A stretch of 64,000 bases of DNA. It comes from Octopus sinensis. Its lineage: Eukaryota. Where the stretch lies: assembly GCF_006345805.1 (NCBI RefSeq), contig NC_042997.1:170624001-170688000 (forward strand). The letters are read 5' to 3'. A program made the translations under genes and the position numbers. This document shows positions 1 to 63,474 of this stretch, one piece after another. The notes beneath the pieces are model-generated. The model saw only the letters and a program-made list of their open reading frames with translations. It did no database searches and was not told the origin of the DNA. Position 1 is the stretch's first letter, and every line of letters begins with the position of its first letter.

Positions 1-170
1 ACGTTCTGAGTTCAAATTCCGCCGAAGTTGACTTTGCCTTTCATCCTTTCGGGGTCGATTAAATAAGTACCAGTTACGCACTGGGGTCGATATAATCGAC
101 TTAATCCGTTTGTCTGTCCTTGTTTGTCCTCTCTGTGTTTAGCCCCTTGTGGGTAGTAAAGAAATAGGTA
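1..170 (+). mobile_element. SINE family A (tRNA head, probable Meta-type central domain), 3' part cut by window edge
   Basis: B-box GAGTTCAAATTCC, central GACTTTGCCTTTCATCCTTTCGGGGTCGAT..AAGTACCAG and tail TTTAGCCCCTTGTGGGTAGTAAAGAAATAG, shared with many copies in the window. Confidence 0.85.
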
Positions 171-174
171 TACT

Positions 175-830
175 ATCTTTTATCTTTTACTTGCTTCAGT
201 CATTGAACTGCAGCCATGCTGGACACCACCCTGAAGAATTATAGTTGAACAAATTGACCCTAGCACTTAATTTTTATTTTTTTAAGCCTGGTACTTATTC
301 TATTGGTCACTTTTGCCAAACTGCTAAGTTACAGGAATGTAAACACACCAGCACTGGTTGTCAAATGGTGGCAGGGGACAAACACAAACTTAAAGATACA
401 CACGGACACAGACTCAGACACACAGACACACACTCACACACACGCATGTGTGCACATATGTATATGATGGGCTTCTTTCAGTTTTTGTCTGACAAATCCA
501 TCCATGAGACTTTAGTTGGCTTGGGGTTATAATAGAAAACATTTGCCCAAGGTGCCATGCAATAAGAATGAACCCGGATCCATTTGGTTAGGAAGTTATG
601 GGGATGTAATCACAACACCATTGGTTGTCAAGTGAGGCTGGGGACATAGTCAATCACAAAGACACACACACACACACACACACATACGACAGGCTTCTTT
701 CAGTTTCCATTTACCAAATCCACTCACAAGGCTTCAGGTTGAAGACACTTGCCCAAGGTGGCATGCAGTGGTACTGAATCTGAAACCATGTGATTGGGAG
801 GCAAGCTTCTTACTACACAGTTATGTCTGT
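175..830 (-). mobile_element. Two adjacent decayed SINE family B copies (tRNA head + CORE-like domain)
   Basis: Reverse complement of the ACCTTGGGCAAGTGTCTT CORE-like motif twice, plus the family B tail TTTTACTTGCTTCAGTCATT. Confidence 0.7.
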
Positions 831-3639: not shown

Positions 3640-4093
3640 GACTGGCCTCCATGCTGTGGGCACGTAACAATCACCATCCGATCGTGGCCGATCGCCAGCC
3701 TCATCTGGCTCCTGTGTCGGTGGCACATAAAAAACACCATCCGAGCGTGGTTGTCTGCTAGCCTTGTCTGGCATCTGTGTCGGTGGCACATAAAAAACAC
3801 CATCCGAGCGTGGCCGTTCGCCAGCCTCGTCTGGCACCTGTGTCGGTGGCACATAAAAAACACCATCCGAGCGTGGCCGTTCGCCAGCCTCGTCTGGCAC
3901 CTGTGTCGGTGGCACATAAAATCACCCACTACACTCTCGGAGTGGTTGGCGTTAGGAAGGGCATCCAGCTGTAGAAACACTGCCAGATCTGACTGGCCTG
4001 GTGCAGCCTTCGGGCTCCCCAGACCCCAGTTGAACCGTCCAACCCATGCTAGCATGGAAAGCGGACGTTAAATGATGATGATGATGATGATGA
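3640..4093 (+). mobile_element. RTE LINE 3' UTR (family D) with three to four ~57-bp tandem subrepeats
   Basis: Repeated GTGTCGGTGGCACATAAAAAACACCATCCGAGCGTGG units, then the conserved tail and (GAT)n. Confidence 0.85.
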
Positions 4094-5835: not shown

Positions 5836-6814
5836 CCAATCCTTTCTTTCTATAATGATCAAACCAATATTTATTGGAAGTAATTACTTGGCCCATAAAT
5901 GCCTGCTCTTCTACAGATTATGTATGTAAATATTTTGATGAATAATGAACTAGAGTAGCAAGAATTCTTCCACTGTCTTGAAGTAGATCAAAGGACTTAT
6001 ATTCCTACACCCTCAATCTTTTCGGACTACCAACAAACGTTCTGCAATTTTTGGTGACACCACTGAATTGTCAGTTGGTCATTAAATATCTTTATACTGG
6101 AATGTAATATGCATATTTACCATTCAATCCTTGCTTCAAAAGTAAAACATATAAAACTCAAAAGAAAATAGGAAAAAAAAACCCAACAAAAATCATAAAA
6201 CTGGTTCATAGCTGGGTTTTTGAATATCATTATATATAATTCTATGTTTCAGTCATTCACAGACTTTTATCTCCGACAAGGTAGATAGTGCAAAACCACT
6301 TCTGATCTTATTAGTGCAATCAATGTGGTCTCAAAGCGTACAGATACAGCTTATTTTCACATAGATTACATACATTAGCGAAAAGCAACCAATGAAAATG
6401 GAGAACAGAGATAAGTTAAATACTGGGCCTTGTGGAAGATGCAGGCGACAGATCGGAATCAAAAGGGAGACATAAATTTTCTCATTAAGTAGCTTTGCAT
6501 CCATCTAAGCAGTATCCTATGTATTTCAATTTGGTGCAAAGTTTCTTATTCATCATCAGCTAAATGATATCCATTGATGTTCAGAGCTTTGAAACCTGTT
6601 CAGGCAATAATCATATGAAAGAATAGTATAATGGTTTGTTGTGCCACAGTTTTGTCAGAAGCTAAATTTACTGCTTGGATTGAATTACTTTATCTTCATT
6701 TCTAACCTGATACCGTTCAGATTATTCTCTCGAATGTATTGCTTATTTATTCACATTGTTTTGAATTAATCATGCATTATCTTGTAACTTTGAGATCTTC
6801 ATAATATGGTTACT

Positions 6815-7030
6815 CTTTTACTCTTTTACTTGTTTTAGTCATTTGACTGTGGCCATGCTGGAGCACCGCCTTTAGTCGAGCAAATTGACCCCAGGATTTA
6901 CTCTTTGCAAGCCTAGTACTTATTCTATTGGTCTCTTTTGCTGAACTGCTAAGTTACGGGGACGTAAACACACCAGCATCAGTTGTCAAGTGATGTTGGG
7001 GAGACAAACTCAGACACACAAACACACACA
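6815..7030 (-). mobile_element. SINE family B, 3' half
   Basis: CTCTTTTACTTGTTTTAGTCATTTGACTGTGGCCATGCTGGAGCACCGCC is the reverse complement of the family B tail. Confidence 0.85.
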
Positions 7031-7035
7031 CATAA

Positions 7036-7495
7036 TAATAGTTCTTTATTGGACGCAAGGCTCATCGATGCAATATGAGTCTTGTCATAAAACATACGTG
7101 GATACACGTATCTCTCTTTTTACTTGTTTCAGTCATTTAACTGCAGCTATGCTGGAGCACTGCCTTTAGTCCAGCAAATCGACCCCAGGACTTATTCTTT
7201 ATAAGCCTAGTACTTATTCTATCGGTCTCTTTTGCTGAACGTAAACACACCAGCATTGGTTGTCAAGCGATGTTGGAGGGACAAACACAGACACACAATC
7301 ACACACACATATATATGTATACATAAATACGATGGGCTTCTTTCAGTTTCCTTCTACCAAATCCACTCACAAGGCTTTGGTCAGCCCAAGGCTAAAGTAG
7401 GAGACACTTGTCCAAAGTACCATGCAGTGGGACTGAACCCGGAACCATGTGGTTGGTAAGCAAGCTATTTACTACACAGTCACTCCTGCACCTAC
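7036..7495 (-). mobile_element. SINE family B with extra 3' extension ending in AATAAA and (TAT)n
   Basis: Full head/CORE/tail, followed by a segment also attached to the copy at 57795-58235. Confidence 0.85.
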
Positions 7496-19330: not shown

Positions 19331-20225
19331 TTGAAACTATCTCAGCCTCATCACCAGGATATGAAGTGTTGTTGTCTTTTGTACAGCTTCTTTTATTGTG
19401 AGCAATTTTTGTTAATGCGGGTTTTTGTTCCAGATTTTGGCAGTACCATGTCATATAGCACATATTTTGGCTGCTGAAGTCATACATCATCAGTTTCATG
19501 CTTTCAAATTCAGGTGAGGGATCTTGCCAAAGGCTTTCTCCATATTGACAAATACCAAGTGCAGTGGTTTACTTTTGACTAAATACTCCTCTTGCAGTTG
19601 ACTTACAAGAAAGAAAATATCAGTGGTATATCCCAGGCACAAAATCAAACCACAATTTATCTAGCTTAATTCTCTTCCTAATTAATTGATCTATAACTCT
19701 TTCTTGTACCTATCATGACCTTGTCTATCAATTTGATAACTCTGTAATTACTTCTTAAGGTAGTTCCTTTATCCTTGTACAGTTATTGACTATAATACTG
19801 CTACATCAGTTATTGGGTTGTACGTATATAAATATATACATTTACATATACCTATCTATACATATTCGATCTAAAGGGTTCTTTAACTCAATATTTACTT
19901 ACTATTATTCATTGCTTTATCTTCTCCAAGTTCTTCAGATGATAAAGAAAAAAAATATATGCACATACACACACATATGTAAACACACAGATTTATAGGA
20001 CTTGGTTGTTTGCTTTGCAACCATATGGCTTTAGCTTCAGTTGCCACCATGTGATACATACATATGTATACTCTAGGTGTATGAGTCATTCTGTAACTTC
20101 TGCTGTTTCTTAATAATATATATATACATATATACTCACACATATATACATCTGTGTGAGTGTATATATATATACATACATACATACAAATACACACACA
20201 CACACATATATACATCTGTGTGTGC

Positions 20226-20286
<61 letters not shown>

Positions 20287-20325
20287 TAAATATATGAAAG
20301 AATGGAGCTGAAGGACGAATTAACA

Positions 20326-20430
20326 AAATTCCTTTATTTTCGACATATGTTTCGAAGGCTGCATATTCCTAATTACGAAGGAATAAGGAGTACATTATGC
20401 CACTTTCTCATCAGGAAAAGCAAGGAACTT
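20326..20430 (-). ncRNA. Type I hammerhead ribozyme, family 1 (predicted cleavage between 20342 and 20341)
   Basis: Exact reverse complement of 20735-20839. Confidence 0.85.
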
Positions 20431-20734
20431 ACGTCAACATCAAAATGCACAAAAAACTTTCAGATGATTGCTCACATGGAGCCCATAGCGGTAATGATTA
20501 CCGCTATGGGCTCCATGTGAGCAATCATCTGAAAGTTTTTTGTGCATATGCCACTTTCTCATCAGGAAAAGCAAGTTCCTTGCTTTTCCTGATGAGAAAG
20601 TGGCATATGCACAAAAAACTTTCAGATGATTGCTCACATGGAGCCCATAGCGGTAATCATTACCGCTATGGGCTCCATGTGAGCAATCATCTGAAAGTTT
20701 TTTGTGCATATGCCACTTTCTCATCAGGAAAAGC

Positions 20735-20839
20735 AAGTTCCTTGCTTTTCCTGATGAGAAAGTGGCATAATGTACTCCTTATTCCTTCGTAATTAGGAAT
20801 ATGCAGCCTTCGAAACATATGTCGAAAATAAAGGAATTT
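20735..20839 (+). ncRNA. Type I hammerhead ribozyme, family 1 (predicted cleavage after C20823)
   Basis: Stem I AAGTTCCTT-GC-TTTTC / GAAAA-TA-AAGGAATTT; CTGATGA 20751-20757; stem II GAAAGTGGCATA/TATGCAGCCTTC; GAAA 20812-20815; palindromic stem III ACATATGT; GUC triplet. Confidence 0.88.
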
Positions 20840-21002
20840 TGTTAATTCGTCCTTCAGCTCCATTCTTTCATATATTTATATTTTTAAACATACAAATTTC
20901 CACACGAAAGCACGTAAACGTGTTTTTTCTGATGTCAATTTGCTACCCAGGTATCGGTTAATTCGAATTATCCTTAATAAGATAATTCATTCAACTACTC
21001 AA

Positions 21003-21039
<37 letters not shown>

Positions 21040-21178
21040 ATATAGAAATATATATATATATATATAAATATATACATACATACATACATACACGCACACA
21101 CATGCACACTCACACATGTACACACACACATGCACACACACACACATATATTATCCAAAATGTACAGTATTATATATC

Positions 21179-21282
21179 CATCATGGCTGATCTTACTAAT
21201 CAGTTTCACACTAGGAATACAATGAAGTGTTAGGTAACAATCCAATTATGTCGCCTTACACTCATCAGAGTTAGTTGATATG
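21179..21282 (-). ncRNA. Hammerhead-like motif, family 2 (GUA triplet, predicted cleavage between 21194 and 21193)
   Basis: CTGATGA (21268-21262) ..54 nt.. GAAA-CTGATTAG-TA-AGATCAG; stem III ACT/AGT; stem II closure ambiguous. Confidence 0.55.
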
Positions 21283-21293
21283 AAAAAGAATTC

Positions 21294-21397
21294 CATATCA
21301 GCTAACTCTGATGAGTGTAAAGTTATATAATTTGATTGTTACCTAACACTTCATTGTATTCCTAGTGTGAAACCGATTGGAAAGATCAGCCATGATG
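21294..21397 (+). ncRNA. Hammerhead-like motif, family 2, probably inactive
   Basis: CTGATGA 21308-21314, GAAA 21369-21372, but U16.1 is replaced by A (GGA-A). Confidence 0.45.
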
Positions 21398-21492
21398 TAC
21401 ATTTCGGATAATATACCCACTCTATTGACAGATATATGAGTATCTTTTCTCTGACTTATGGACTATTAGATTATTCATGCGTATATATATAT

Positions 21493-21534
<42 letters not shown>

Positions 21535-21573
21535 TAAATATATGAAAGAATGGAGCTGAAGGACGAATTAACA

Positions 21574-21677
21574 AAATTCCTTTATTTTCGACATATGTTT
21601 CGAAGGCTGCATATTCCTAATTACGAAGGAATAAGGAGTACATTATGCACTTTCTCATCAGGAAAAGCAAGGAACTT
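21574..21677 (-). ncRNA. Type I hammerhead ribozyme, family 1 (cleavage between 21590 and 21589)
   Basis: Same as 20326-20430 with a 1-nt deletion in stem II. Confidence 0.8.
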
Positions 21678-21818
21678 ACGTCAACATCAAAATGCACAAA
21701 AAACTTTCAGATGATTGCTCACATGGAGCCCATAGCGGTATGATTACCGCTATGGGCTCCATGTGAGCAATCATCTGAAAGTTTTTTGTGCATATGCCAC
21801 TTTCTCATCAGGAAAAGC

Positions 21819-21923
21819 AAGTTCCTTGCTTTTCCTGATGAGAAAGTGGCATAATGTACTCCTTATTCCTTCGTAATTAGGAATATGCAGCCTTCGAAAC
21901 ATATGTCGAAAATAAAGGAATTT
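21819..21923 (+). ncRNA. Type I hammerhead ribozyme, family 1 (cleavage after C21907)
   Basis: Identical to 20735-20839; CTGATGA 21835-21841, GAAA 21896-21899. Confidence 0.88.
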
Positions 21924-22083
21924 TGTTAATTCGTCCTTCAGCTCCATTCTTTCATATATTTATATTTTTAAACATACAAATTTCCACACGAAAGCACGTA
22001 AACGTGTTTTTTCTGATGTCAATTTGCTACCCAGGTATCGGTTAATTCGAATTATCCTTAATAAGATAATTCATTCAACTACT

Positions 22084-22137
<54 letters not shown>

Positions 22138-22233
22138 TATATATATATATATAAATATATACATACATACATACATACACGCACACACATGCACACTCAC
22201 ACATGTACACACACACATGCACACACACACACA

Positions 22234-22502
22234 TATATTATCCAAAATGTACAGTATTATATATCCATCATGGCTGATCTTACTAATCAGTTTCACACTA
22301 GGAATACAATGAAGTGTTAGGTAACAATCCAATTATGTCGCCTTACACTCATCAGAGTTAGTTGATATGAAAAAGAATTCCATATCAGCTAACTCTGATG
22401 AGTGTAAAGTTATATAATTTGATTGTTACCTAACACTTCATTGTATTCCTAGTGTGAAACCGATTGGAAAGATCAGCCATGATGTACATTTCGGATAATA
22501 TA
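22234..22502. repeat. Second copy of the 270-bp hairpin carrying two family 2 hammerhead-like cores
   Basis: Same sequence as 21147-21415, offset 1087. Confidence 0.9.
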
Positions 22503-22567
22503 CCCACTCTATTGACAGATATATGAGTATCTTTTCTCTGACTTATGGACTATTAGATTATTCATGC

Positions 22568-22603
<36 letters not shown>

Positions 22604-22604
22604 T

Positions 22605-22890
22605 TTTATTCTTTTACTTGTTTCAGTAATTTGACTGAGGCCATGCTGAAGCACTGCCTTAAAAGGTTTTTTAGTCAAAGAAATCAACTCCAGGACTTTT
22701 CTTTGTAAGCCTAGTACTTATTCTACCAGTCTCTTTTGCCTAAACACTATGTTATGGGAAGATATAAACACATCAACATCGGTTGTCAAGCAATGGTAGG
22801 GGGACAAACGATGTCACAAAGACACATAGATATATGCATGTATATGTATATATATATATATCTGATGGGCTTCTTTCAGTTTCTGTTTAT
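22605..22890 (-). mobile_element. SINE family B, 5'-truncated
   Basis: Family B tail and middle in reverse complement. Confidence 0.75.
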
Positions 22891-28516: not shown

Positions 28517-28912
28517 ATCATCATCATCATCGTTTAACGTCCGCTTTCCATGCTAGCATGGGTTGGACAGTTCAACTGGGGTCTGGGAAGCCTGAAGGCT
28601 GCACCAGGCCAGTCAGATCTGGCAGTGTTTCTACAGCTGGATGCCCTTCCTAATGCCAACCACTCCGTGAGTGTAGTGGGTGCTTTTTATGTGCCGCCGA
28701 CACAGGTGCCAGACGAGGCTGGCGAACGGCCACGCTCGGATGGTGTATTTTATGTGCCATGGACACAGGTGCCAGACGAGGCTGGCGAACGGCCACGCTC
28801 GGATGGTGTTTTTTACGTGCCACCGGCACAGAGGCTAGGCGAGGCTGGCACAGCCATGATCGGATGGTGTTTGTTACATGCCACCAGCACGGAGGCCAGT
28901 CGATGTGGTACA
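28517..28912 (-). mobile_element. RTE LINE 3' UTR with 57-bp subrepeats
   Basis: Same subrepeat as 3640-4093. Confidence 0.9.
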
Positions 28913-28929
28913 AAAATTTTATCTACAGG

Positions 28930-29335
28930 CCCGGGCATGGCTGTGTGGTAAGAAGCTTGCTTTTTCTAACCACATAGTTCCGGGTTAAGTCCCACTGCAT
29001 GACACCTTAGGTGAGTGTCTTCTACTATAGCCTCGGGCTGACCAAAGCCTTGTGAGTGGATTTGGTTGACAGAAACTGAAAGAAGCCTGTTGTATATATG
29101 TGTATATACGTATGTGTAGCTGTGTTTGTCCCCCATCACTACTTGATAACCGGTGTTGGTGTGTTGACATCCCCATAACTTAACAGTTTGGTAAGGGAGA
29201 CTGACGGAATAAGTACCAGGCTGAAAAAAGTACTGGGATTGATACATTCAACTGAAAGTTCTTTAAGGTGGTGCCCCAGCATGGCCACAGTCTAATAACT
29301 GAAACATGTAAAAGATGAAAGATAAAAGATACATT
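28930..29335 (+). mobile_element. SINE family B
   Basis: Head, CORE-like motif and tail present. Confidence 0.85.
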
Positions 29336-31649: not shown

Positions 31650-32085
31650 TTTTGTGTCCTTTGCTTCCTTTTGAGCTCTTTTCACTAATATGTGTCCTTA
31701 GTGAAAATATTATTATTTCTTTTATTATACTTAGTGAAAATGTTATCGTTATTTATTTTATTAAACCTATTACATACTACTTAGCAAGGATGTTATCTTT
31801 AGGTTTCCTGACAAGTTTCCTCATCCACGTGGGGACTGTACCTTTCTGGACACACTCATTCAATGCACTGCATGTCATCTCTTCAGCCAGAAGCCATGAA
31901 TCCCATCTGGTCCAGGGGCTTTCAAGTCAGGCACTTTACCCACTTGCTCTTTCACGACATGCTTATGACAATATTTCTTTGTTTCTTTCTTCCTTGTAAT
32001 TCTGTTTTGATAGTTCCTACCCACATTGCATCCCTTATATGCACCACATTGCTTCCCCATAATCCACTCCTTGTTATTATTATCA
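31650..32085 (-). pseudogene. R4/Dong-like RT N-terminal fragment
   Basis: KEQVGKVPDLKAPGPDGIHGFWLKR matches the KAPGPD..FW.K motif; adjacent to (ATT)n. Confidence 0.75.
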
Positions 32086-32182
<97 letters not shown>

Positions 32183-32211
32183 TATTATTATTATTATTGA
32201 TATTATTATAG

Positions 32212-32372
32212 GTGTAGAAGTGGCTGTGTGGTAAGTAGCTTACTTACCAACCACATGGTTCCGGGTTCAGTCCCACTGCGTGGCACCTTGGGCAAGTGTT
32301 TTCTACTATAGCCTTGGGCCGACTAAAGCCTTGTGAGTGGATTTGGTAGACGGAAACTGAAAGAAGCCCGTC

Positions 32373-32416
<44 letters not shown>

Positions 32417-32640
32417 ATATATATGTATGTGTTTATGTTTGTGTGCCTGTGTTTGTCTCCCTAGCATCGCTTGACAACTGATGCTGGTGTGTTTACGTCC
32501 CCGTAACTTAGCGGTTCGGCCAAAGAGACTGATAGAGACTTACAAAGAATAAGTCCTGGGGTCTATTTGCTCGACTAAAGGCAGTGCTCCAGCATGGCCA
32601 CAGTCAAATGACTGAAACAAGTAAAAGAGTAAAAGAGAGT
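32212..32640 (+). mobile_element. SINE family B, full length
   Basis: Complete head/CORE/tail. Confidence 0.9.
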
Positions 32641-33422
32641 AATTATTTCATAAGTCTCATTTTTTCTCAGTGCTTTCAATATACAGACAAGTGCAGTTCC
32701 GTGTGTTTTGAGCAGCTGTAGCACTTTGCATTTCAAATGTTCTTGTATTGTATTGTAAGAACTCTATGGAATATGTATGTGTGTGTGTGTGTTTGTATGC
32801 ATGTGTGCAGTCTTTAATAATGTTATTTACTCGATGTTCTCAGAGACTGCATACTTTAAGATTTCGTACACATATTTGTCTACCTGTATATGTGCATGTG
32901 TGTATCCATATGTGTGTATGTATGTGTGATGAGTGTGCACATGCGCACACACACACACACACACACACACAAATATATATATATTATACATTATACATAC
33001 ATATATATATATATATATATTGATAACAACGGTATGATAACAAAAGAAAGAAAGAGACCTCGATATTATATAAATAGAGGAATTTATCTGTAAAATTTAT
33101 ATATATATATATATGAAAATAAATATATATATATAAATATATGTAAAATTTATATATATATATATAAAGATTTATATATATATACATACAAATATATATA
33201 TATATATATTTATACATAGCTACGTACACACACATATATGAATTTATATACACACATATATACATATATATGTATACATACATACATACATACATACATA
33301 CATACATACATACATACATGCATGCATGCATACATACATACATACATACATACATACATACATACATACATACATACATGCATGCATGCATGCATACATA
33401 CATACATACATACATACATACA

Positions 33423-33453
<31 letters not shown>

Positions 33454-33934
33454 GTACATACATGTGTGTGTGTGTGTGTGTATGCTCCTGTTTTTAATTA
33501 CCATCAAGATACCTATCATTAGTGGGATTCTTGCAGTTTTTTTTTCTATTTTCACATTGTTATCTCTGTCTCCAGATATTATATTTGAATAGTTTCAACA
33601 ATTCTTTCAGACATATATTGTCATCAGTTGCAACTGATACATTGATTAGAAGACAATTTTTATTTATTTATTTATATTTACTAATGCTGTTTGACACTAA
33701 TATCTGAACAATTTTCCTTAATCGTTTTGTCTGTCTGCTTGAAATGGCATATTCCAGACAATGGTCAGAGTACACCATTTTTGTTTTGTTCTGAACATTT
33801 AGAGACACAGGCATGATTGAATGGTTCCAAACAGTCAAGGACAAACTGCAGTTTGCGTGACTTTCTCAATGGTATGCCAGTGAAAAATTAGCTCAACTTT
33901 TTTTAGTAATACTATCTATCGCTTTTCTCTTTTC

Positions 33935-34266
33935 TCTTTTACTTATTTCAGTCATTTTGACTGTAGCCATGCTGGAGCACCACCTTTAGTCGAGCAAATC
34001 GACCCCAGGACTTAGGACTTATTCATTGTAAGCCTAGTACTTATTCTATTGGTCTCTTTTGCCGAAACGCTAAGTTACGGGGACGTAAACACACCAGCAT
34101 CAGTTATCAAGCGATGTTGGGGGGACAAACACAGACACACCAACATATACACACACACATACATATATATACATATATACGATGGGCTTCTTTCAGTTTC
34201 TGTCTCCCAAATCCACTCACAAGGCTTTGGTCGACCCGAGGCTATAGTAGAAGACACTTGCCAAGG
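33935..34266 (-). mobile_element. SINE family B, 5'-truncated
   Basis: Reverse complement of family B from the CORE-like motif to the tail. Confidence 0.85.
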
Positions 34267-36571: not shown

Positions 36572-36960
36572 TAGGAGTGGCTGTGTGGTAAGTAGCTTGC
36601 TTACGAACCACATGGTTCCAGGTTCAGTCCCACTGCGGGGCACCTTGGGCAAGTGTCTTCTGCTATAGCCTCAGGCCAACCAAAGCCTTGTGAGTGGATT
36701 TGGTAGACGGAACTAAAAGAAGCCTGTCGTATATATGTATATATATGTATGTGTGTGTGTACATGTTTGTGTGTCTGTGTTTGTCCCCCCGACATCGCTT
36801 GACAACTGATGCTGGTGTGTTTATGTCCCCAGCAAAAGAGGCCGATAGAATAAGTACTAGGCTTACAAAGAATAAGTCCTGAGGTCGATTTGCTCAACTA
36901 AAGGCAGTGCTCCAGCATGGCCACAGTCAAATGACTGAAACAAGTAAAAGAGTAAAGAGT
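36572..36960 (+). mobile_element. SINE family B
   Basis: Head/CORE/tail. Confidence 0.9.
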
Positions 36961-37289
36961 AACATATACAAGGCAAAGAAGTGAAATCTTTTTGAAATCA
37001 CATCCTATAAATTTTTAAAACTAGCAAAGGGTATGTTGACTGGAGTTCAACAGCAATAAAAAAAAAATATCAATAGTAGTGACAACAACTAAGGAATCTC
37101 TATATAGTGGTTTGGTTTGACTTGCTAAGAATAAGAGGCAATGGCGAAAGACTGAGATCTCTGGAGATATGCTGTGACTGCAAAGACCCAACAAATAAGG
37201 TGAGTTCATAGCTGTTTCCTGCATCAGTTTCGCATAGCCCCAGCCCATCCAAAGAACCTTGGATTGCAGAACAACCTGCTGTACTTACC

Positions 37290-38700: not shown

Positions 38701-39874
38701 CACCACCGCCACCGCCACCACCACCACCACAACAACAACAGCAACAACAACATCAACGGCAGCACTAACACAAAAGAATGAACATAACACTTCATCAAAG
38801 AATAATCATGGATAACAATATATTGATAAAAACAAGCAGCAGTGCGAAGACACAATATTGTGAAACTTGGCTTGTGTAATAGTAGAAGAAAAGATACTGG
38901 GCAAAAAATAATGTTTTATTTTCAATCAATAACGATGATGACAACAACAACAACAACAACAACAGCAATAATAATCCTTTCTGTTATAGGCATAAGGCTT
39001 GAAATGTTTGGTAGGAAGTGGACTAGTCAATTGCATTGACCTCAGTGCTCAACTGGTAAACTATTTTATTGACCTCCAAAAGGACAAAAGGCAAAGACAG
39101 CCTCAGAGCATCTGGTACTTATGAAAGGCAAAGTCAACCTTAGTAGAATTTGAACTCAAAACATAAACATGGTGCATGCATCTTCTAGTCAGCTTGGAAT
39201 TGCAGCATTGTTTCTAAAAGGTGTGCATCTTGAAGTATGAATGGTCTTCTTGGATTCATGGTAAATCAGTGACCTTGGACACAAGCAGCAGTAAAGTCAT
39301 CTATGCTTCAACAGAGAAGCAGAACAGCTGGATTAATGCCACTAAGCTTTTTGTCCAGCCTTAACAATAATAATGATTATGATAGTAATAAGTTTTTAAT
39401 TGTCTCTTCAAATTTACTCACTAAAATTCGAGCAAATCGACCCCAAGAATAAGTCCTGGGGTCGATTTGCTCGACTAAAGGCAGTGCTCCAGCATGGTCG
39501 CAGTCAAATGACTGAAACAAGTGAAAGAATATAATCTATTTCCTGTACTGCTATGTTACTACTACAACTAAAGGTTTAATTTCTAATTATTCTCTTCAGG
39601 ATGTACCATGACCAGTTGTTGATGATTGGCTCTGTCCACTGCCAATTAACTAAAACATCAGCATGTAGGCTTTGAGTGTTGAGAAAGACTTATTCAGCTT
39701 CCAGTAGCTGGATTCTTGCTTTTAGGTCACCTATGCAAATCTTCAATTTGTGATCTGTACCTAATGATGTTACAAACAGCTTATATAGATATAATCTGGA
39801 TGACCTAATGTGATTGCTCCATGACCACACTAGCACATTTGGTCAAAATCTCTCAGATTGTTGGAAACATTTGT

Positions 39875-40205
39875 AAGCCTAGTACTTATTCTAACAGTCT
39901 CTTTTGCCGAACTGCTAAGTTACGGTGACGTAAACATACCAGCATCGGTTGTCAAGCGATGCTGGGGGGACAAACACAGACACACAAACATATACACACA
40001 CGTACATATACATATATACACACATATATACACTTATACATATATACGACAGGCTTCTTTCAGTTTCCATCTACCAAATCCATCCACAAGGCTTTGGTCG
40101 GCCCAAGGCTATAGTAGAAGACACTTGCCTAAAGTGCCACACAGTGGGACTGAACCCGGAACCATGTGGTTGGTAAGCAAGCTACTTACCACACAGCCAC
40201 TCCTA
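39875..40205 (-). mobile_element. SINE family B
   Basis: Reverse complement of head and CORE-like domain. Confidence 0.9.
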
Positions 40206-45487: not shown

Positions 45488-46809
45488 CGAGGAGGTACCC
45501 AAAAGTAACAGGAAACGTTCTCTGTGGGACAAGCCACTTGTAGTTCAGGCTTCTGCCACTAGAAGCTGCTTGATGCAACCCTCAGGCATCAATCTGCTGA
45601 CCAGCATCATTAGGTGAACTCTTATTGCCACATGGTGCATCTTTGTTTTTCAGTGCTTCTTTCTCCTCTGTTCGTTGATTTTTACAATGGCTGAAATGAA
45701 GGAACAGCATGCTTCTGTAAAATTCTGTTTCCTGCTTGGGAGAATGGCGGCCAAAACAACTGTCATGCTTCAAACAACTTACAAGGACGCTGCCATGAGC
45801 AAAACACAAGTTTATAAGTGGTTTTCATGCTTTAGGAATGGTCACTTGTCGCTTGAAGACCAACCTTGTTCAGGGCGGCCATCAACATCCCAAATGAATG
45901 AAGACATCATGAAAATTCATGAACTGGTCCTGGAGGACCATCGCCGAGCCTTTGATGAACTTGTTGATATGACTGGCGTGTCCTGGAGCTCCTGCCAACA
46001 AATTTTGAGTGAGGAATTGTGAATGAAAATAATTGCAGCAAAATTTGTGCCTTGCTTGGTTAAGGAAGATCAAAAGCAGTCACAACTGAATGCATGTTGT
46101 GAACTGAAAAACACTTGGAAGTTGATCCAGAACTTTTTTCAAAGGTCATCACTGGTGATGAAAACTGATGCTTTGGATACGACCTAGAAACGAAGCAGCA
46201 ATCAAGTCAATGAAAGCATTCACTGTCACCCTGCACCCTAAAAAACACATCAAGTGAAGTCCAATGTCAAGACAATGCTGATTTGTTTCATCGATGCGAA
46301 AGGAATTGTCCACACAGAATTTGTTCCTCCTGATCAAACTGTTAACCAGACATTTCATTTGGCAGTTCTGAAGTGTTTGTGAGACGTGTGGAGATGAAGA
46401 CGCTTTGACCTGTGGCAAAGTGGAGAGTGGTGGTTTCATCATGACAATGCCCCAGCATACACTGCCTTAAATGTGAGACTGTTTTTGACCAAAAGTGGCA
46501 TGAGCTCGCTTATGCACCCTCTCTATTCAACCAATCTTGCTCACTGACATATTTTGTTTTTCCAAATGAATAGTCCTTAAAGGAAAACACTTCGTAGATT
46601 TGGAAGAGGGTGAAGAAAAAAATGATGGAGGCGTTAAAAGGCATCACTTTGCAAGAGTTCCAGGACTACTTTGAACAGTGGAAAATGCAACCAAACCAAT
46701 GCATTGCTTGAAATGGCGAATACATTGAAGGCAATAAAAATGTAAACATGTAAAATTAAGTGACTAAAATGATATTACAAAATTCTGGTTTCTTTTGGGT
46801 ACCCCCTCA
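45488..46809 (+). mobile_element. Full-length mariner element (1322 bp), TA TSD
   Basis: TIRs CGAGGAGGTACCCAAAAGTAACAGGAA vs reverse complement TGAGGGGGTACCCAAAAGAAACCAGAA; TA at 45486-45487 and 46810-46811. Confidence 0.92.
45687..46753 (+). pseudogene. Mariner transposase, disrupted
   Basis: MAEMKEQHASVKFCF..GRPSTS..AKFVP..ITGDE..HHDNAP..GEYIEG, with stops and frameshifts. Confidence 0.9.
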
Positions 46810-59899: not shown

Positions 59900-60990
59900 T
59901 GTGTGGTGTGTGTGTGTGTGTGTGTGTGTGTAGTGAATCTTGCTGGCATGAAGTGGATTCGATCCACCATAGCCAAATTTAAATTAACACTTCAACAGAA
60001 CTTTTCTCACTGTGCAACAATGTTTTTTTCTGTGACAGCAGTTTTACATTTTCCAGATGCCTTAGCTAGGACAAAATAAAGTCTTCACCACTTGACTGTT
60101 CTAACCTCTTCTATTTCACCAAAAGCTGGAATTAAGATTACAAGACCAGCAACTAAATCTATTGTTCTCAATGATATGTATATTCTTCTGGATAGTTATA
60201 AAAGCAAGAACCCCCAGCAAAAATCAGTTAATCACTTGGTGACAACTCAGTCACTTGGTGACAATTCAGTTAGTTAGTTGGTGACAACTCTCAAGTTGAG
60301 AGAGAGCTGACATCAGTTAGTGAACCGACCTCTAGAAAAATGGCCACAAGCAGACAGACAAACGGCCTGAAAAAAAGAAAGAAGTTTAGATTCAGCGACT
60401 ATATGAGACTCAACTTCCCACACTCTCTCACTTTCACTAACTCACTTAGTCTTCTCTGCACATTAACATATCTCTCTCTATGGTTTACTACTACGATAAG
60501 AACGTACAGGCCGAAATTATCTTGTTTTACTTCACATGCTTTTGGATTTTATCACCTGCCCAATGAGGCAAGGCATATTCGATGTAACGGTAAATAAATA
60601 TTTTCTTCACAACTTCAATCAATGTTCTTTCATCTTTACATAACGACAATCAACGAAGAGCCAATCTTTACAAACTGATAATGACGCCGACATCTCATAT
60701 TATTGTTTACAATTTAATTTCAATCGTTACACTAATAGACCTCAACTGTTATACAAAATCATCGTTACACACACACACACACACGTGTGTGTGTGTCAGT
60801 GTTTGTCCCTCCACCATCACTTGACAACCGGTGTTGGTGTGTTTACGCCCTCATAACTTAATTGTATCGCAAAAGAGACTGATAGAATAAGTACAAGGCT
60901 TACAAAGAATAAGTCCTGGGGTTGATTTGTTTGACTAAAAGTGGTGCTCCAGCATGGCCACAGTCAAATGACTGAAACAAGTAAAAGAAT
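59690..60990 (+). mobile_element. SINE family B interrupted by an 841-bp insertion
   Basis: Head and CORE at 59690-59928; body resumes at ~60785 (GTGTTTGTCCC..CTTGACAACC..tail). Confidence 0.85.
59929..60769 (+). mobile_element. Probable solo LTR
   Basis: TGTAGTGA...TCGTTACA termini; TATAAAA 60197 with Inr TCAGTT 60224-60229; AATAAA ~60593; short direct repeats TTGGTGACAA. Confidence 0.6.
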
Positions 60991-63101: not shown

Positions 63102-63474
63102 TAATTCTAGAGACATGATGTGAATAAACCAAATTCTAGACTGAATGTTTTTAAAATGATAATCCCTTAGAAGAATACAAAGTGTAACCCTTACTATCAG
63201 CTGACATACCTAAATAAATAAGTTAATAATTATTGGGTAGAGAAATTAAATTCATAACAGAAATATGTATGTGTGTGTGTGTGTGCGCGTGTGGTTGGAT
63301 ATAAGGATAATATTTGAGGGAATGTGTGTATGTATATGTATAAATCCTTTAAAATGTTTTAGCCCGAAGGCCGCGGCCATGCTGGGGGCACCACCGCTGT
63401 ATATTTAATAATTTTAGATAAATTATGTATAAGTAAACACTATGATGAAGTTAAATAAATTAAAATAAACGTAG

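What the first reader, a model, noticed from the sequence alone, without database searches (positions are those of the whole stretch)
20280..20885. Back-to-back intact type I hammerhead ribozymes forming a 600-bp palindrome
Seen: the outer arms (20280-20430, 20735-20885) each contain CUGAUGA, G-C-closed stem II, GAAA, self-complementary stem III ACAUAUGU and a GUC triplet. Stem I has 5 bp, a 2x2 internal loop and 9 bp, and AATAAA follows the cut site. Established: hammerheads with palindromic stem III that act as dimers occur in Penelope-like pLTRs and metazoan retrozymes. Inference: a potentially active self-cleaving RNA on both polarities.
Basis: partly seen in the sequence, partly recalled or inferred. 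Interest (0 to 1): 0.9.

Follow-up and report, generated by a model that had tools for sequence, protein, structure and literature searches.

The report
Inverted retrotransposon ends carrying hammerhead ribozymes
The palindrome is two head-to-head, truncated copies of an octopus Penelope-like retrotransposon, each carrying that element's usual hammerhead ribozyme motif; the motif is real, but it is one of about 2,700 copies in this genome and an ordinary product of how these elements insert.

Summary
Complete type I hammerhead motifs (CUGAUGA, 54-nt helix II, GAAA, palindromic ACAUAUGU, C17) lie at 20737-20841(+) and 20324-20428(-), inside a 630-bp palindrome. A near-identical second pair lies about 1.1-1.25 kb downstream.

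The window comes from Octopus sinensis. The arms are about 230-345-bp 3' ends of a Penelope-like element (PLE). Longer copies continue upstream into a reverse transcriptase plus C-terminal GIY-YIG ORF whose motifs match the published 'Hydra' PLE clade, which targets (TA)n and carries hammerheads.

- The exact motif occurs 2,741 times in the genome, against 0 for a reversed control.
- Of the first 100 hits, 16 neighbouring pairs are head-to-head against 0.6 expected. Inverted copies at the 5' end are a described PLE insertion structure.
- Helices I and II covary between octopus subfamilies. Homologous elements in Argonauta, a bryozoan and environmental (ENA) assemblies carry hammerheads downstream of the ORF.

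Activity is unproven.
- Rfam does not detect the motif.
- Predicted folding of this subfamily favours a competing structure.
- A transcript across the palindrome would lock both ribozymes into dsRNA.
- The arms stop short of the conserved upstream block I read as the element's promoter.
- No insertions start at the cleavage site.

Verdict: a new member of a known kind, of modest interest.

The parts
20219..20279 (.). (TA)n microsatellite on the left flank; presumed insertion target
   Evidence: Read directly from the sequence. Hydra-clade PLEs insert into (TA)n (PMC8557442).
20268..20497 (-). Inverted partial PLE copy (left arm). It runs from the common 5' end (C)ATTACCGC at the palindrome centre outwards to about 70 nt past the ribozyme cut site, and lacks the last ~180 bp of the element.
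   Evidence: 95.4% identical to the reference copy L036 over 219 bp. Inverted repeat I1.
20324..20428 (-). Hammerhead motif on the - strand: helix I 5' strand 20428-20415, CUGAUGA 20414-20408, helix II 20407-20354, GAAA 20353-20350, ACAUAUGU 20350-20343, C17 at 20342, predicted cut between 20342 and 20341.
   Evidence: Clade-specific covariance model scores 131.6 bits (by construction, since this copy was in the training set).
20445..20769 (.). Two 162-bp direct repeats, each an internal zig-zag of short inverted pieces of the leader and of the ribozyme's 5' part. Junctions lie at GCAT/ATGC microhomologies. The second palindrome has one such unit fewer.
   Evidence: Origin is inferred: template switching, or possibly an assembly error.
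20657..21002 (+). PLE 3' unit (right arm), from the common 5' end to the element's 3' end ...CAACTACTCAA, followed by (TA)n. It carries a ~26-nt and a ~5-nt deletion relative to the majority sequence of the 26 aligned copies.
20737..20841 (+). Hammerhead motif on the + strand: helix I 5' strand 20737-20750, CUGAUGA 20751-20757, helix II 20758-20811, GAAA 20812-20815, ACAUAUGU 20815-20822, C17 at 20823, predicted cut between 20823 and 20824, helix I 3' strand 20824-20841.
   Evidence: Covariance model scores 130.2 bits.
21003..21150 (.). (TA)n, (ATAC)n and (CA)n microsatellites following the element's 3' end.
21516..21743 (-). Second inverted partial copy. Hammerhead at 21590-21661 (CUGAUGA to C17) with a 1-nt deletion in helix II, which turns the G.A mismatch into a bulged A.
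   Evidence: Covariance model scores 123.4 bits.
21743..22086 (+). Second + copy. Hammerhead at 21835-21907 (CUGAUGA to C17). It lies 1,084 nt downstream of the first + hammerhead.
20233..22601 (.). Tandem duplication of the whole block (palindrome, microsatellites and a foldback element). The units are 20233-21515 and 21482-22601, 99.3% identical.

Best explanation
The feature is a pair (duplicated, so two pairs) of head-to-head, truncated 3'-end copies of a Penelope-like retrotransposon of Octopus sinensis, inserted in a (TA)n microsatellite. The element's ORF fits the 'Hydra' clade of PLEs.

Each copy carries the hammerhead ribozyme that this element family keeps in its 3' UTR, the region that forms the pseudo-LTR.

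How the ribozyme would work (inferred from the anatomy and published PLE work):
- Helix III (ACAUAUGU) has no loop, so a single motif can form only 2 bp there.
- Two motifs, normally the upstream pseudo-LTR copy and the 3' UTR copy on one full-length transcript, pair their palindromic helix III strands into an 8-bp intermolecular helix.
- This forms a domain-swapped double hammerhead that cuts after GUC, between C20823 and G20824.

How the palindrome arose (inferred):
- It was made at insertion. Either reverse transcription was primed on both target strands, or the cDNA snapped back on itself.
- The inverted arm always stops at a TA-rich stretch about 60-70 nt past the cut site. That stretch can anneal to the (TA)n target.

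At this locus:
- The arms start at the family's common 5' end. They therefore lack the conserved TGACGTCA/TATAAAG block that lies just upstream in long copies.
- Any transcript would have to come from outside.
- A transcript crossing the palindrome would fold into a long dsRNA hairpin rather than into a ribozyme.

I consider these particular copies to be inert insertion products, not a functional two-polarity ribozyme locus.
For: Shown by tool results:

1. Motif and copy number. All core positions are present. The genome holds 2,741 exact copies against 0 for the reversed control.

2. PLE identity.
   - Genomic copies extend upstream to variable 5' ends.
   - L036 carries frameshifted ORFs about 620 nt upstream of the hammerhead.
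   - Its 458-aa ORF hits 620-775-aa proteins at E down to 1.9e-79. RVT_1 is precomputed for three of them.
   - Its 332-aa ORF aligns to the C-terminal GIY-YIG region of the family profile at 99.5% probability, E 8.8e-23.
   - The family consensus shows RWK, ADKT, YRDD, CNCx5C, YIG, CxxC and CRH. These are the features published for the Hydra clade, together with (TA)n targeting and hammerheads.

3. Pseudo-LTR architecture. L036 has a partial copy of the 3' end upstream of its ORF. Argonauta L069 has 516-bp, 100%-identical direct repeats flanking the ORF, each with a hammerhead.

4. Head-to-head pairs are the rule.
   - Among the first 100 hits, 16 neighbouring pairs are -/+, 1 is +/- and none is direct. 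The Poisson expectation is 0.6.
   - Zero-spacer palindromes of 350-480 bp with different centres occur at six other loci.
   - The inverted arm ends 57-74 nt after the cut site wherever I could see it.
   - The literature describes inverted 5'-truncated copies and both-strand priming for PLEs.

5. The fold is conserved.
   - In 32 octopus sequences, 83.8% of cells pair, against 41-46% when partners are slid.
   - 8 pairs show compensatory changes, and 32 double-change cells compare with 19.9+-3.5 in shuffles.
   - Elements with homologous ORFs in Watersipora and ENA assemblies have hammerheads downstream of the ORF, with unrelated stem sequences and self-complementary helix III strands.
   - For sister family B, the double hammerhead is the predicted dimer MFE, -77.2 kcal/mol.

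6. The clade-specific covariance model finds exactly the four copies in the window.
Against: - No Rfam hammerhead model matches, even at E<=10. A short-stemmed relative reaches only 19.6 bits against a cut-off of 34.
- The local Pfam scan and a PDB profile search gave nothing for the ORFs. RT/GIY-YIG identity therefore rests on homologues' precomputed Pfam hits and on motifs.
- Hydra-clade placement rests on the published description, not on a tree.
- For the window's subfamily A, the hammerhead fold is not the predicted optimum: monomer -20.9 against -26.9, dimer -53.6 against -61.2 kcal/mol.
- No excess of genomic copies begins at the cut site (2, 0 and 2 matches for the test and two control positions). 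There is no footprint of cleaved RNA being copied.
- The covariation set was collected with a pattern that fixed the core and helix III. Conservation of those parts within the octopus is therefore not independent evidence.
- The insertion mechanism and the promoter reading are inference.
Confidence: 0.85

Rival explanations
1. A metazoan non-LTR retrozyme: a short non-autonomous repeat whose tandem hammerheads cut out a unit-length RNA that circularises and spreads.
For: - The units are short, non-coding, AT-rich and carry a type I hammerhead with a dimer-type helix III.
- The local tandem duplication puts two sense hammerheads 1,084 nt apart on the + strand and about 1,248 nt apart on the - strand.
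- A 2026 preprint argues that retrozymes derive from PLE pseudo-LTRs.
Against: - None of the neighbouring pairs among the first 100 genomic hits is in direct orientation. Retrozymes are defined by 150-450-bp head-to-tail arrays.
- The units have fixed 5' and 3' ends and are collinear with the 3' UTR of an ORF-bearing PLE.
- No copies start at the cut site.
- The 1.1-kb repeat also duplicates microsatellites and an unrelated foldback element. It therefore looks like a later segmental duplication.
Confidence: 0.06
2. The palindrome, its inner 162-bp zig-zag and the tandem duplication are assembly artefacts. Only single hammerhead-bearing PLE ends really exist here.
For: - The literature says complex PLE insertions often lead to assembly problems.
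- The tandem units are 99.3% identical and differ mainly by one 162-bp unit and microsatellite lengths.
- The inner structure is unusually intricate.
Against: - Head-to-head pairs recur at many loci with different centre points and at divergences of up to 14% between arms. That is not expected of read-level chimeras.
- The arrangement matches the published PLE insertion structure.
- A second -,+,-,+ block lies at G000:C1:70362882-70363890.
Confidence: 0.08
3. A domesticated hairpin-RNA locus: the palindrome is kept because its transcript gives dsRNA and small RNAs, or is a long miRNA-like precursor. The ribozyme motifs are passengers.
For: - The predicted hairpin is extremely stable, -515.5 kcal/mol against -129 for shuffles.
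- Sub-threshold miRNA-family hits cover the inner palindrome, for example MIR530 at 57 bits.
Against: - All those hits are far below their gathering scores (85-140 bits) and are what any perfect hairpin gives.
- The same structure arises repeatedly as an insertion by-product.
- The arms start downstream of the conserved TGACGTCA/TATAAAG block seen in long copies.
- There is no evidence of conservation of this particular locus.
Confidence: 0.03
4. A chance resemblance to a hammerhead in AT-rich repetitive DNA.
For: Rfam's curated hammerhead models do not match.
Against: - 0 matches in shuffles and in the reversed-pattern genome control, against 4 and 2,741 real ones.
- Compensatory changes in helices I and II between subfamilies.
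- Hammerheads downstream of the homologous ORF, or in the pseudo-LTRs, in four other taxa.
Confidence: 0.01

Closest known systems
Hammerhead ribozymes of Penelope-like elements (min-HHR / palindromic helix III variants; Cervera & de la Pena 2014, PMC4209133)
   Same: - Type I topology.
- Located in the pseudo-LTR / 3' UTR of a PLE.
- G10.1-C11.1 kept.
- Helix II larger than in canonical animal hammerheads.
- Helix III short and palindromic, so a dimer is the expected active form.
- Thousands of copies per genome, falling into families with compensatory changes.
   Different: - Helix II is far longer: 54 nt, made of a 12-bp imperfect basal stem, a ~12-nt asymmetric internal loop and a 5-7-bp apical hairpin. 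The paper describes 6-8 bp.
- Helix I is long: 5 bp, a 2x2 loop, then 9 bp.
- Helix III has a full 8-nt palindrome and no loop.
- There is no unpaired nucleotide between A9 and G10.1.
- No Rfam model matches it.
'Hydra' clade of C-terminal-EN+ PLEs (Craig et al. 2021, PMC8557442)
   Same: - RWK motif, DKG changed to DKT, CxCx5C linker, and CxxC and CxH around the EN core, all in the homologue family.
- DKT, YRDD, YIG and CxxC in the octopus copy.
- Homologues of about 620-775 aa, many on 2.3-2.9-kb contigs.
- (TA)n insertion sites.
- Hammerheads present.
   Different: - The octopus copy examined (L036) is frameshifted. It has an asparagine-rich low-complexity insertion where relatives have the CxC linker.
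- Clade placement was not tested by phylogeny.
- The papers I searched do not describe octopus hammerheads.
Metazoan non-LTR retrozymes (Cervera & de la Pena 2020, PMC7229834)
   Same: - Short, AT-rich, non-coding units with a type I hammerhead whose weak helix III favours dimers.
- Probably mobilised by PLE machinery.
   Different: - Retrozymes are head-to-tail arrays of 150-450-bp monomers expressed as circular RNA.
- These units are dispersed singly or head-to-head, have fixed ends and are plain 3' ends of the autonomous element.
Double-hammerhead self-cleavage of newt satellite 2 and avocado sunblotch viroid RNAs (Forster et al. 1988, as cited in PMC4209133)
   Same: A helix III too short to be stable in a monomer; two motifs pair to make the active structure.
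   Different: Those RNAs come from tandem or rolling-circle multimers. Here the partner motif would be the second pseudo-LTR of a full-length element. In the window the neighbouring copy is antisense and cannot serve as partner.

Membership tests
Hammerhead ribozyme, type I | Conserved catalytic core: C3-U4-G5-A6-N7-G8-A9, G12-A13-A14, the A15.1-U16.1 pair, and a non-G at position 17. | tested here: met
   CUGAUGA, GAA, A20815-U20822 and C20823 are present in all four window copies.
Hammerhead ribozyme, type I | Three helices around the core, with helix I open (5' and 3' ends) and G10.1-C11.1 closing helix II. | tested here: met
   Helix I is 5 bp, a 2x2 loop and 9 bp. Helix II is closed by G20758-C20811. 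Across 32 octopus sequences, 83.8% of cells pair against 41-46% when slid, and 8 pairs show compensatory changes.
Hammerhead ribozyme, type I | Match to the curated covariance models (Rfam RF00163 and related). | tested here: not met
   No hit at gathering score, nor at E<=10 on 19800-22300. I attribute this to the 54-nt helix II and loop-less helix III. A short-stemmed relative (L075:4151-4200) gets Hammerhead_1 at 19.6 bits, E 0.034, still below the cut-off of 34.
Hammerhead ribozyme, type I | The hammerhead fold is thermodynamically accessible. | tested here: inconclusive
   Window copy: monomer -20.9 against MFE -26.9; double hammerhead -53.6 against dimer MFE -61.2 kcal/mol. Sister family B: the double hammerhead equals the dimer MFE, -77.2. 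The energy model ignores tertiary contacts.
Hammerhead ribozyme, type I | Mg2+-dependent site-specific self-cleavage after position 17. | not testable with these tools
   Needs in vitro transcription and cleavage, or 5'-OH / cyclic-phosphate RNA-end sequencing. The indirect genomic footprint (copies starting at the cut site) was sought and not found.
Penelope-like element (Hydra clade) | [quoted passage not shown] | tested here: met
   - L036 ORFs lie upstream of the hammerhead.
- Homologues reach E 1.9e-79, three of them with precomputed RVT_1.
- hhalign to the C-terminal region gives 99.5% probability.
- Motifs are present in alignment A2 and match the published description.
- Caveats: the local Pfam scan and the PDB search were negative, and no phylogeny was made.
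Penelope-like element (Hydra clade) | Pseudo-LTRs (a partial tandem copy of the 3' end upstream of the ORF) carrying the hammerhead. | tested here: met
   L036 has a 3'-end fragment upstream of its ORF. Argonauta L069 has 516-bp identical direct repeats with hammerheads flanking the ORF.
Penelope-like element (Hydra clade) | Variable 5' truncation, an inverted copy adjoining the 5' end, and insertion into (TA)n. | tested here: met
   Variable 5' ends. 16 head-to-head pairs among 100 hits. Zero-spacer palindromes. (TA)n on both flanks in the window and in other copies.
Metazoan non-LTR retrozyme | Head-to-tail arrays of 150-450-bp monomers, each with a hammerhead. | tested here: not met
   No direct-orientation neighbours within 5 kb among the first 100 hits. 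The only local direct repeat is a 1.1-1.25-kb segmental duplication that includes unrelated DNA.
Metazoan non-LTR retrozyme | Expression as small circular RNAs. | not testable with these tools

The most novel reading that the evidence does not exclude
Octopod PLEs may carry a distinct hammerhead subclass that current models and descriptors miss. Its features are a loop-less 8-nt palindromic helix III and a large helix II domain. That domain is 54 nt here, 95 nt in Argonauta and 55 nt in one ENA relative.

The inner part of helix II (GCAUAAUGYACYCCUUAUUCCUU...AGGAAUAUGC) is better conserved between octopus subfamilies than the flanks. It could be a binding site for the element's protein, or a tertiary-contact module, rather than a passive stem.

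Two further points fit a both-strand or snap-back reverse-transcription step:
- head-to-head palindromes are very common;
- their outer boundary is constant.

Such a step would make this genome a natural record of the poorly understood PLE integration mechanism. The palindromes could also be a large source of hairpin dsRNA.
Probability: 0.25. Interest if true: 0.5.

Novelty: new member of a known kind. Interest (0 to 1): 0.25.

Why it matters
For this window, very little: it is transposon debris in a microsatellite.

More broadly there are three modest points.
1. About 2,700 intact hammerhead motifs in an octopus genome are invisible to Rfam. Ribozyme censuses based on those models would therefore miss motifs of this type.
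2. The family gives a clean natural series for testing what PLE hammerheads need in order to cleave. The subfamilies differ by single helix II changes: an A.C mismatch in family A against a G-C pair in family B, with predicted consequences for folding.
3. The many zero-spacer head-to-head insertions with a fixed outer boundary offer genomic evidence on how PLEs integrate. That question has only recently been addressed in vitro (PMC11167929).

Tried and rejected
- **Rfam.** Gathering and E<=10 searches gave no hammerhead hit. The many miRNA-family hits are sub-threshold and reflect only the perfect hairpins.
- **Pfam and PDB.** The local Pfam scan of the octopus ORFs and of five homologues, and a PDB profile search, gave nothing. 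I relied instead on homologue searches, precomputed Pfam labels, hhalign and published motifs.
- **Footprint of in vivo cleavage.** I looked for copies whose 5' end sits exactly at the cut site next to AT-only flank. Counts were 2, against 0 and 2 at two control positions, so there is no excess.
- **Cap-derived extra G at the short units' 5' ends.** 4 of 12 matches have G before ATTAYC. Two of these read like the L027 palindrome junction (ATAG|ATTATCAC), so about two candidates remain. Not supported.
- **Substitution rate, core against rest of unit, in 25 copies.** The result was 0% against 7%. I rejected it as evidence of selection. The copies were chosen by similarity over the hammerhead region and by an exact-core filter, and gaps inflate the 'rest' figure.
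- **Retrozyme reading.** Rejected for lack of head-to-tail arrays.
- **AATAAA as a poly(A) signal.** It is part of helix I and is not conserved in sister families.
- **The CTGATGAG at 21308-21315, in the neighbouring foldback element.** It has no helix II, helix III or helix I partner, so it is not a hammerhead.
- **Further genomic loci.** The 2,741 sites were therefore sampled, not surveyed. One look-up of encoding contigs failed.
Full report
**1. What is in the sequence**

On the + strand:
- GUUCCUUGCUUUUC, the helix I 5' strand (20737-20750)
- CUGAUGA (20751-20757)
- a 54-nt helix II, closed by G20758-C20811
- GAAA (20812-20815)
- the palindrome ACAUAUGU (20815-20822)
- C17 (20823)
- GAAAAUAAAGGAAUUUUG, the helix I 3' strand (from 20824)

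The - strand carries the mirror image: CUGAUGA at 20414-20408 and C17 at 20342.

Helix I is 5 bp, a 2x2 internal loop, then 9 bp.

The outer arms, 20268-20430 and 20735-20897, are 163 nt and 98% complementary. The 304 nt between them consist of nested perfect palindromes and two 162-bp direct repeats.

The pattern CTGATGA-N40-65-GAAACATATGTC occurs four times in the window and never in 100 shuffles. The extra two copies, at 21590-21661(-) and 21835-21907(+), form a second palindrome. The block 20233-21515 is repeated at 21482-22601 with 99.3% identity.

**2. Where the window comes from and how common the motif is**

The window is G000:C1:170624001-170688000 of a 2.72-Gb, 13,516-contig assembly. 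Proteins named 'Octopus sinensis' by NCBI lie on contigs of 31,203,755 and 30,097,204 bp. These are exactly the lengths of G000 contigs C24 and C22. The genome is therefore Octopus sinensis.

- A BLAST with one arm gave 1,809 first-look candidates. The 47 that were scored include, besides the window's own copies, hits of 91-98% identity on many other contigs.
- The exact motif pattern, with N40-70, occurs 2,741 times: 1,361 forward and 1,380 reverse. The reversed control pattern occurs 0 times.

**3. What the repeat is**

I aligned 26 copies. They define a unit of about 380 bp:
- an ~83-nt leader starting around (C)ATTAYCGCTATGGGCTCC
- the hammerhead
- ~180 nt more, ending ...CAACTACTCAA
- a (TA)n tract

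About half the copies continue further upstream, to different extents. That is the 5'-truncation pattern of a retroelement.

The longest copy I fetched is L036 (G000:C4, minus strand). Upstream of its hammerhead it has frameshifted ORFs of 114, 458 and 332 aa. The last ends about 620 nt before CUGAUGA.

- The 458-aa ORF contains SDKT, FDISSFYPSI and YRDD. It hits 71 proteins, mostly 620-775 aa, at E down to 1.9e-79. They come from Argonauta hians, the bryozoan Watersipora subatra and many environmental assemblies. Three carry a precomputed RVT_1 hit.
- The 332-aa ORF aligns to the C-terminal 220 columns of a 27-member alignment of those proteins, at 99.5% probability and E 8.8e-23. The aligned region includes the VYQ...YIG...R..NH endonuclease core and a CxxC.
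- The family consensus shows RMRWK, ADKT, GLYRDDGL, CNCRx4C, YIGxT, RCNLC and CRH.

Craig et al. (PMC8557442) define the 'Hydra' clade of PLEs by these features:
- an RWK motif
- DKG changed to DKT
- a CxCx5C linker
- CxxC and CxH motifs around the endonuclease core
- a C-terminal GIY-YIG domain without CCHH
- short elements
- insertion into (TA)n
- canonical hammerheads

I therefore assign the octopus element to that clade. The caveats are that I made no tree and that the local Pfam and PDB searches were silent.

L036 also has a fragment of the element's 3' end upstream of its ORF. The Argonauta relative has 516-bp, 100%-identical direct repeats on both sides of its ORF, each containing a hammerhead. 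This is the pseudo-LTR architecture.

**4. Is the hammerhead a conserved structure?**

*Within the octopus.* The 2,741 copies fall into subfamilies whose helices differ. I aligned 32 distinct sequences (A1) and imposed the hammerhead structure.
- 83.8% of cells form standard pairs, against 41-46% when the 3' partners are slid by 1-3 columns.
- Eight pairs show changes on both sides. Examples: helix II column pair 32-82, G-C 14 / A-U 11; helix I column pairs 19-100 and 16-103, U-A to C-G.
- 32 double-change cells compare with 19.9+-3.5 in shuffles (0 of 500 reach the observed value).
- The core and helix III were fixed by my search pattern, so their invariance in this set says nothing.

*Across taxa.* This evidence is independent. 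Contigs encoding homologous ORFs carry hammerhead motifs downstream of the ORF, with unrelated stem sequences.

| Source | Locus | Core | Helix II | Helix III strand | N17 |
|---|---|---|---|---|---|
| Watersipora subatra | L070:5170 | CUGAAGA | 4 bp | ACUUUAAGU | A |
| Argonauta hians | L069:6044 and 1689 | CUGAGGA | 95 nt | palindromic ACUGCAGU | A |
| ENA assembly | L071/L072 | CUGAUGA | 55 nt | palindromic AUAAAUUUAU | A |
| ENA assembly | L075, two motifs | CUGAAGA; CUGACGA | 4 and 6 bp | ACAGGCUUGU; ACAGGUCUGU | A |

*Rfam.* No model reports any of these at gathering score. Hammerhead_1 reaches 19.6 bits (E 0.034, cut-off 34) on one L075 motif. Nothing at all is reported on the octopus motif at E<=10. 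I attribute that to the long helix II and the loop-less helix III.

*My own model.* A covariance model built from A1 finds exactly the four window copies (123-132 bits) and no degenerate extras.

**5. The palindrome**

Among the first 100 genomic hits, all on contig C1, 17 neighbouring pairs lie within 5 kb.
- 16 are '- then +', that is 5' ends facing.
- One is '+ then -', inside another -,+,-,+ block.
- None is direct.
- A Poisson model expects 0.6.

Six other loci that I could read hold zero-spacer palindromes of 350-480 bp, with different centre points. Wherever visible, the inverted arm stops 57-74 nt past the cut site, in the TA-rich stretch ...CATATATTTATATTTTT. The other arm runs to the true 3' end.

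[quoted passage not shown] A purified PLE protein cleaves and extends both target strands.

My reading is inference. The palindrome is made during insertion, by both-strand priming or by the cDNA copying back on itself. The TA-rich internal stretch anneals to the (TA)n target and sets the outer boundary.

The inner 162-bp zig-zag has junctions at GCAT/ATGC microhomologies. It looks like further template switches. It could also be an assembly error, as could the 99.3% tandem duplication. I cannot decide that without reads.

**6. Would these copies work?**

ViennaRNA calculations:

| Form | Hammerhead fold (kcal/mol) | Unconstrained MFE (kcal/mol) |
|---|---|---|
| Window + arm, monomer | -20.9 | -26.9 |
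| Window + arm, domain-swapped double hammerhead | -53.6 | -61.2 |
| Sister family B, dimer | -77.2 | -77.2 |

- In the window's subfamily the competitor pairs GCUUUUC of helix I with GAAAGU of helix II.
- In the sister family B sequence, the fourth helix II pair is G-C instead of A.C. There the double hammerhead is itself the dimer MFE.
- The architecture therefore fits a dimeric ribozyme, but the window's subfamily is predicted to be a poorer one.
- Published PLE hammerheads cleave weakly in vitro, and mainly as dimers. In one PLE the ribozyme is dispensable for insertion in vitro.

A 630-nt transcript of the whole palindrome has an MFE of -515.5 kcal/mol, against -129+-8 for shuffles. In that fold every ribozyme nucleotide is paired with the antisense arm.

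The arms start at the family's common 5' end. Immediately upstream of that point, long copies of several subfamilies share TGACGTCA, TATAAAG or an A/T-rich box, and CACTCATTATCGC. I read this as a putative promoter with its start region. That is inference, and the spacing is not constant. If it is right, the window copies lack their promoter.

I also looked for insertions that begin exactly at the cut site. That is the footprint expected if cleaved RNA were reverse-transcribed. I found 2, against 0 and 2 at two control positions.

**7. Comparison and verdict**

The motif is a member of the PLE-associated, dimer-type hammerheads (PMC4209133), carried by an element that fits the Hydra PLE clade (PMC8557442). 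It differs from the described variants in three ways: a very large helix II domain, a long interrupted helix I, and a complete 8-nt palindromic helix III.

It is not a retrozyme in the defined sense, because there are no head-to-tail arrays. Short promoter-less units like these may still be related to retrozymes in origin.

The papers I could search mention PLEs in octopus but not their hammerheads.

My conclusions:
- The 'active on both polarities' inference is unsupported for this locus.
- This is a new member of a known kind.
- Interest is low to moderate. It lies mainly in the blind spot of current ribozyme models and in the record of PLE integration.

Noticed in passing
window 21155-21425 and 22242-22512: A ~260-bp foldback, MITE-like element (arms 21174-21285 and 21291-21402, 89% complementary). 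It sits between the two palindromes and was duplicated with them. Its hairpin tip holds CTCATCAG...CTGATGAG but none of the other hammerhead parts.
   Followed up: partly
window 170-389, 1239-1488, 6811-7024, 7115-7301, 22590-22865, 29095-29320, 32397-32647, 33927-34178, 36731-36961, 39870-40029, 60786-60986: A ~250-bp SINE-like repeat next to microsatellites, present at least 11 times in 64 kb. It also lies just downstream of the PLE copy in L036.
   Followed up: no
window 3659-3921 and 28679-28903: Two arrays of a 63-nt tandem repeat (GGCACATAAAAAACACCATCCGAGCGTGGCC...) in opposite orientation, 25 kb apart.
   Followed up: no
window 45618-46022 (+) and 31875-32243 (-): Two transposon ORF fragments. 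The first looks like the N-terminal part of a mariner-type transposase. The second looks like a LINE reverse-transcriptase fragment (...APGPDGIHGFWLK...). Both labels are my reading of the translations, not search results.
   Followed up: no
G000:C1:70362882-70363890 (not in the window): A second -,+,-,+ 'tandem of palindromes' of the same hammerhead family, with period 838 bp. This arrangement may therefore be recurrent rather than a local accident.
   Followed up: no
L006-L010, L016, L017, L020-L023, L028, L040, L044, L045, L064, L065, L068: about 95-125 nt upstream of CUGAUGA: A block conserved across subfamilies (TGACGTCA, then TATAAAG or an A/T-rich box, then CACTCATTATCGC). It lies just upstream of the point where the short units begin, and is a candidate pseudo-LTR promoter and transcription start.
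   Followed up: partly
L020 (reverse complement 2548-2625); also L052, L057: A sister element family with a different hammerhead (helix II GAUGAUUACAUUG...CAAUGUUUUCUUC, 58-60 nt). At least the L020 copy ends in (CTAT)n rather than (TA)n, which suggests a different microsatellite target.
   Followed up: partly
window 63341-63407: An isolated 67-bp fragment of the PLE tail region, 91% identical to L036.
   Followed up: no
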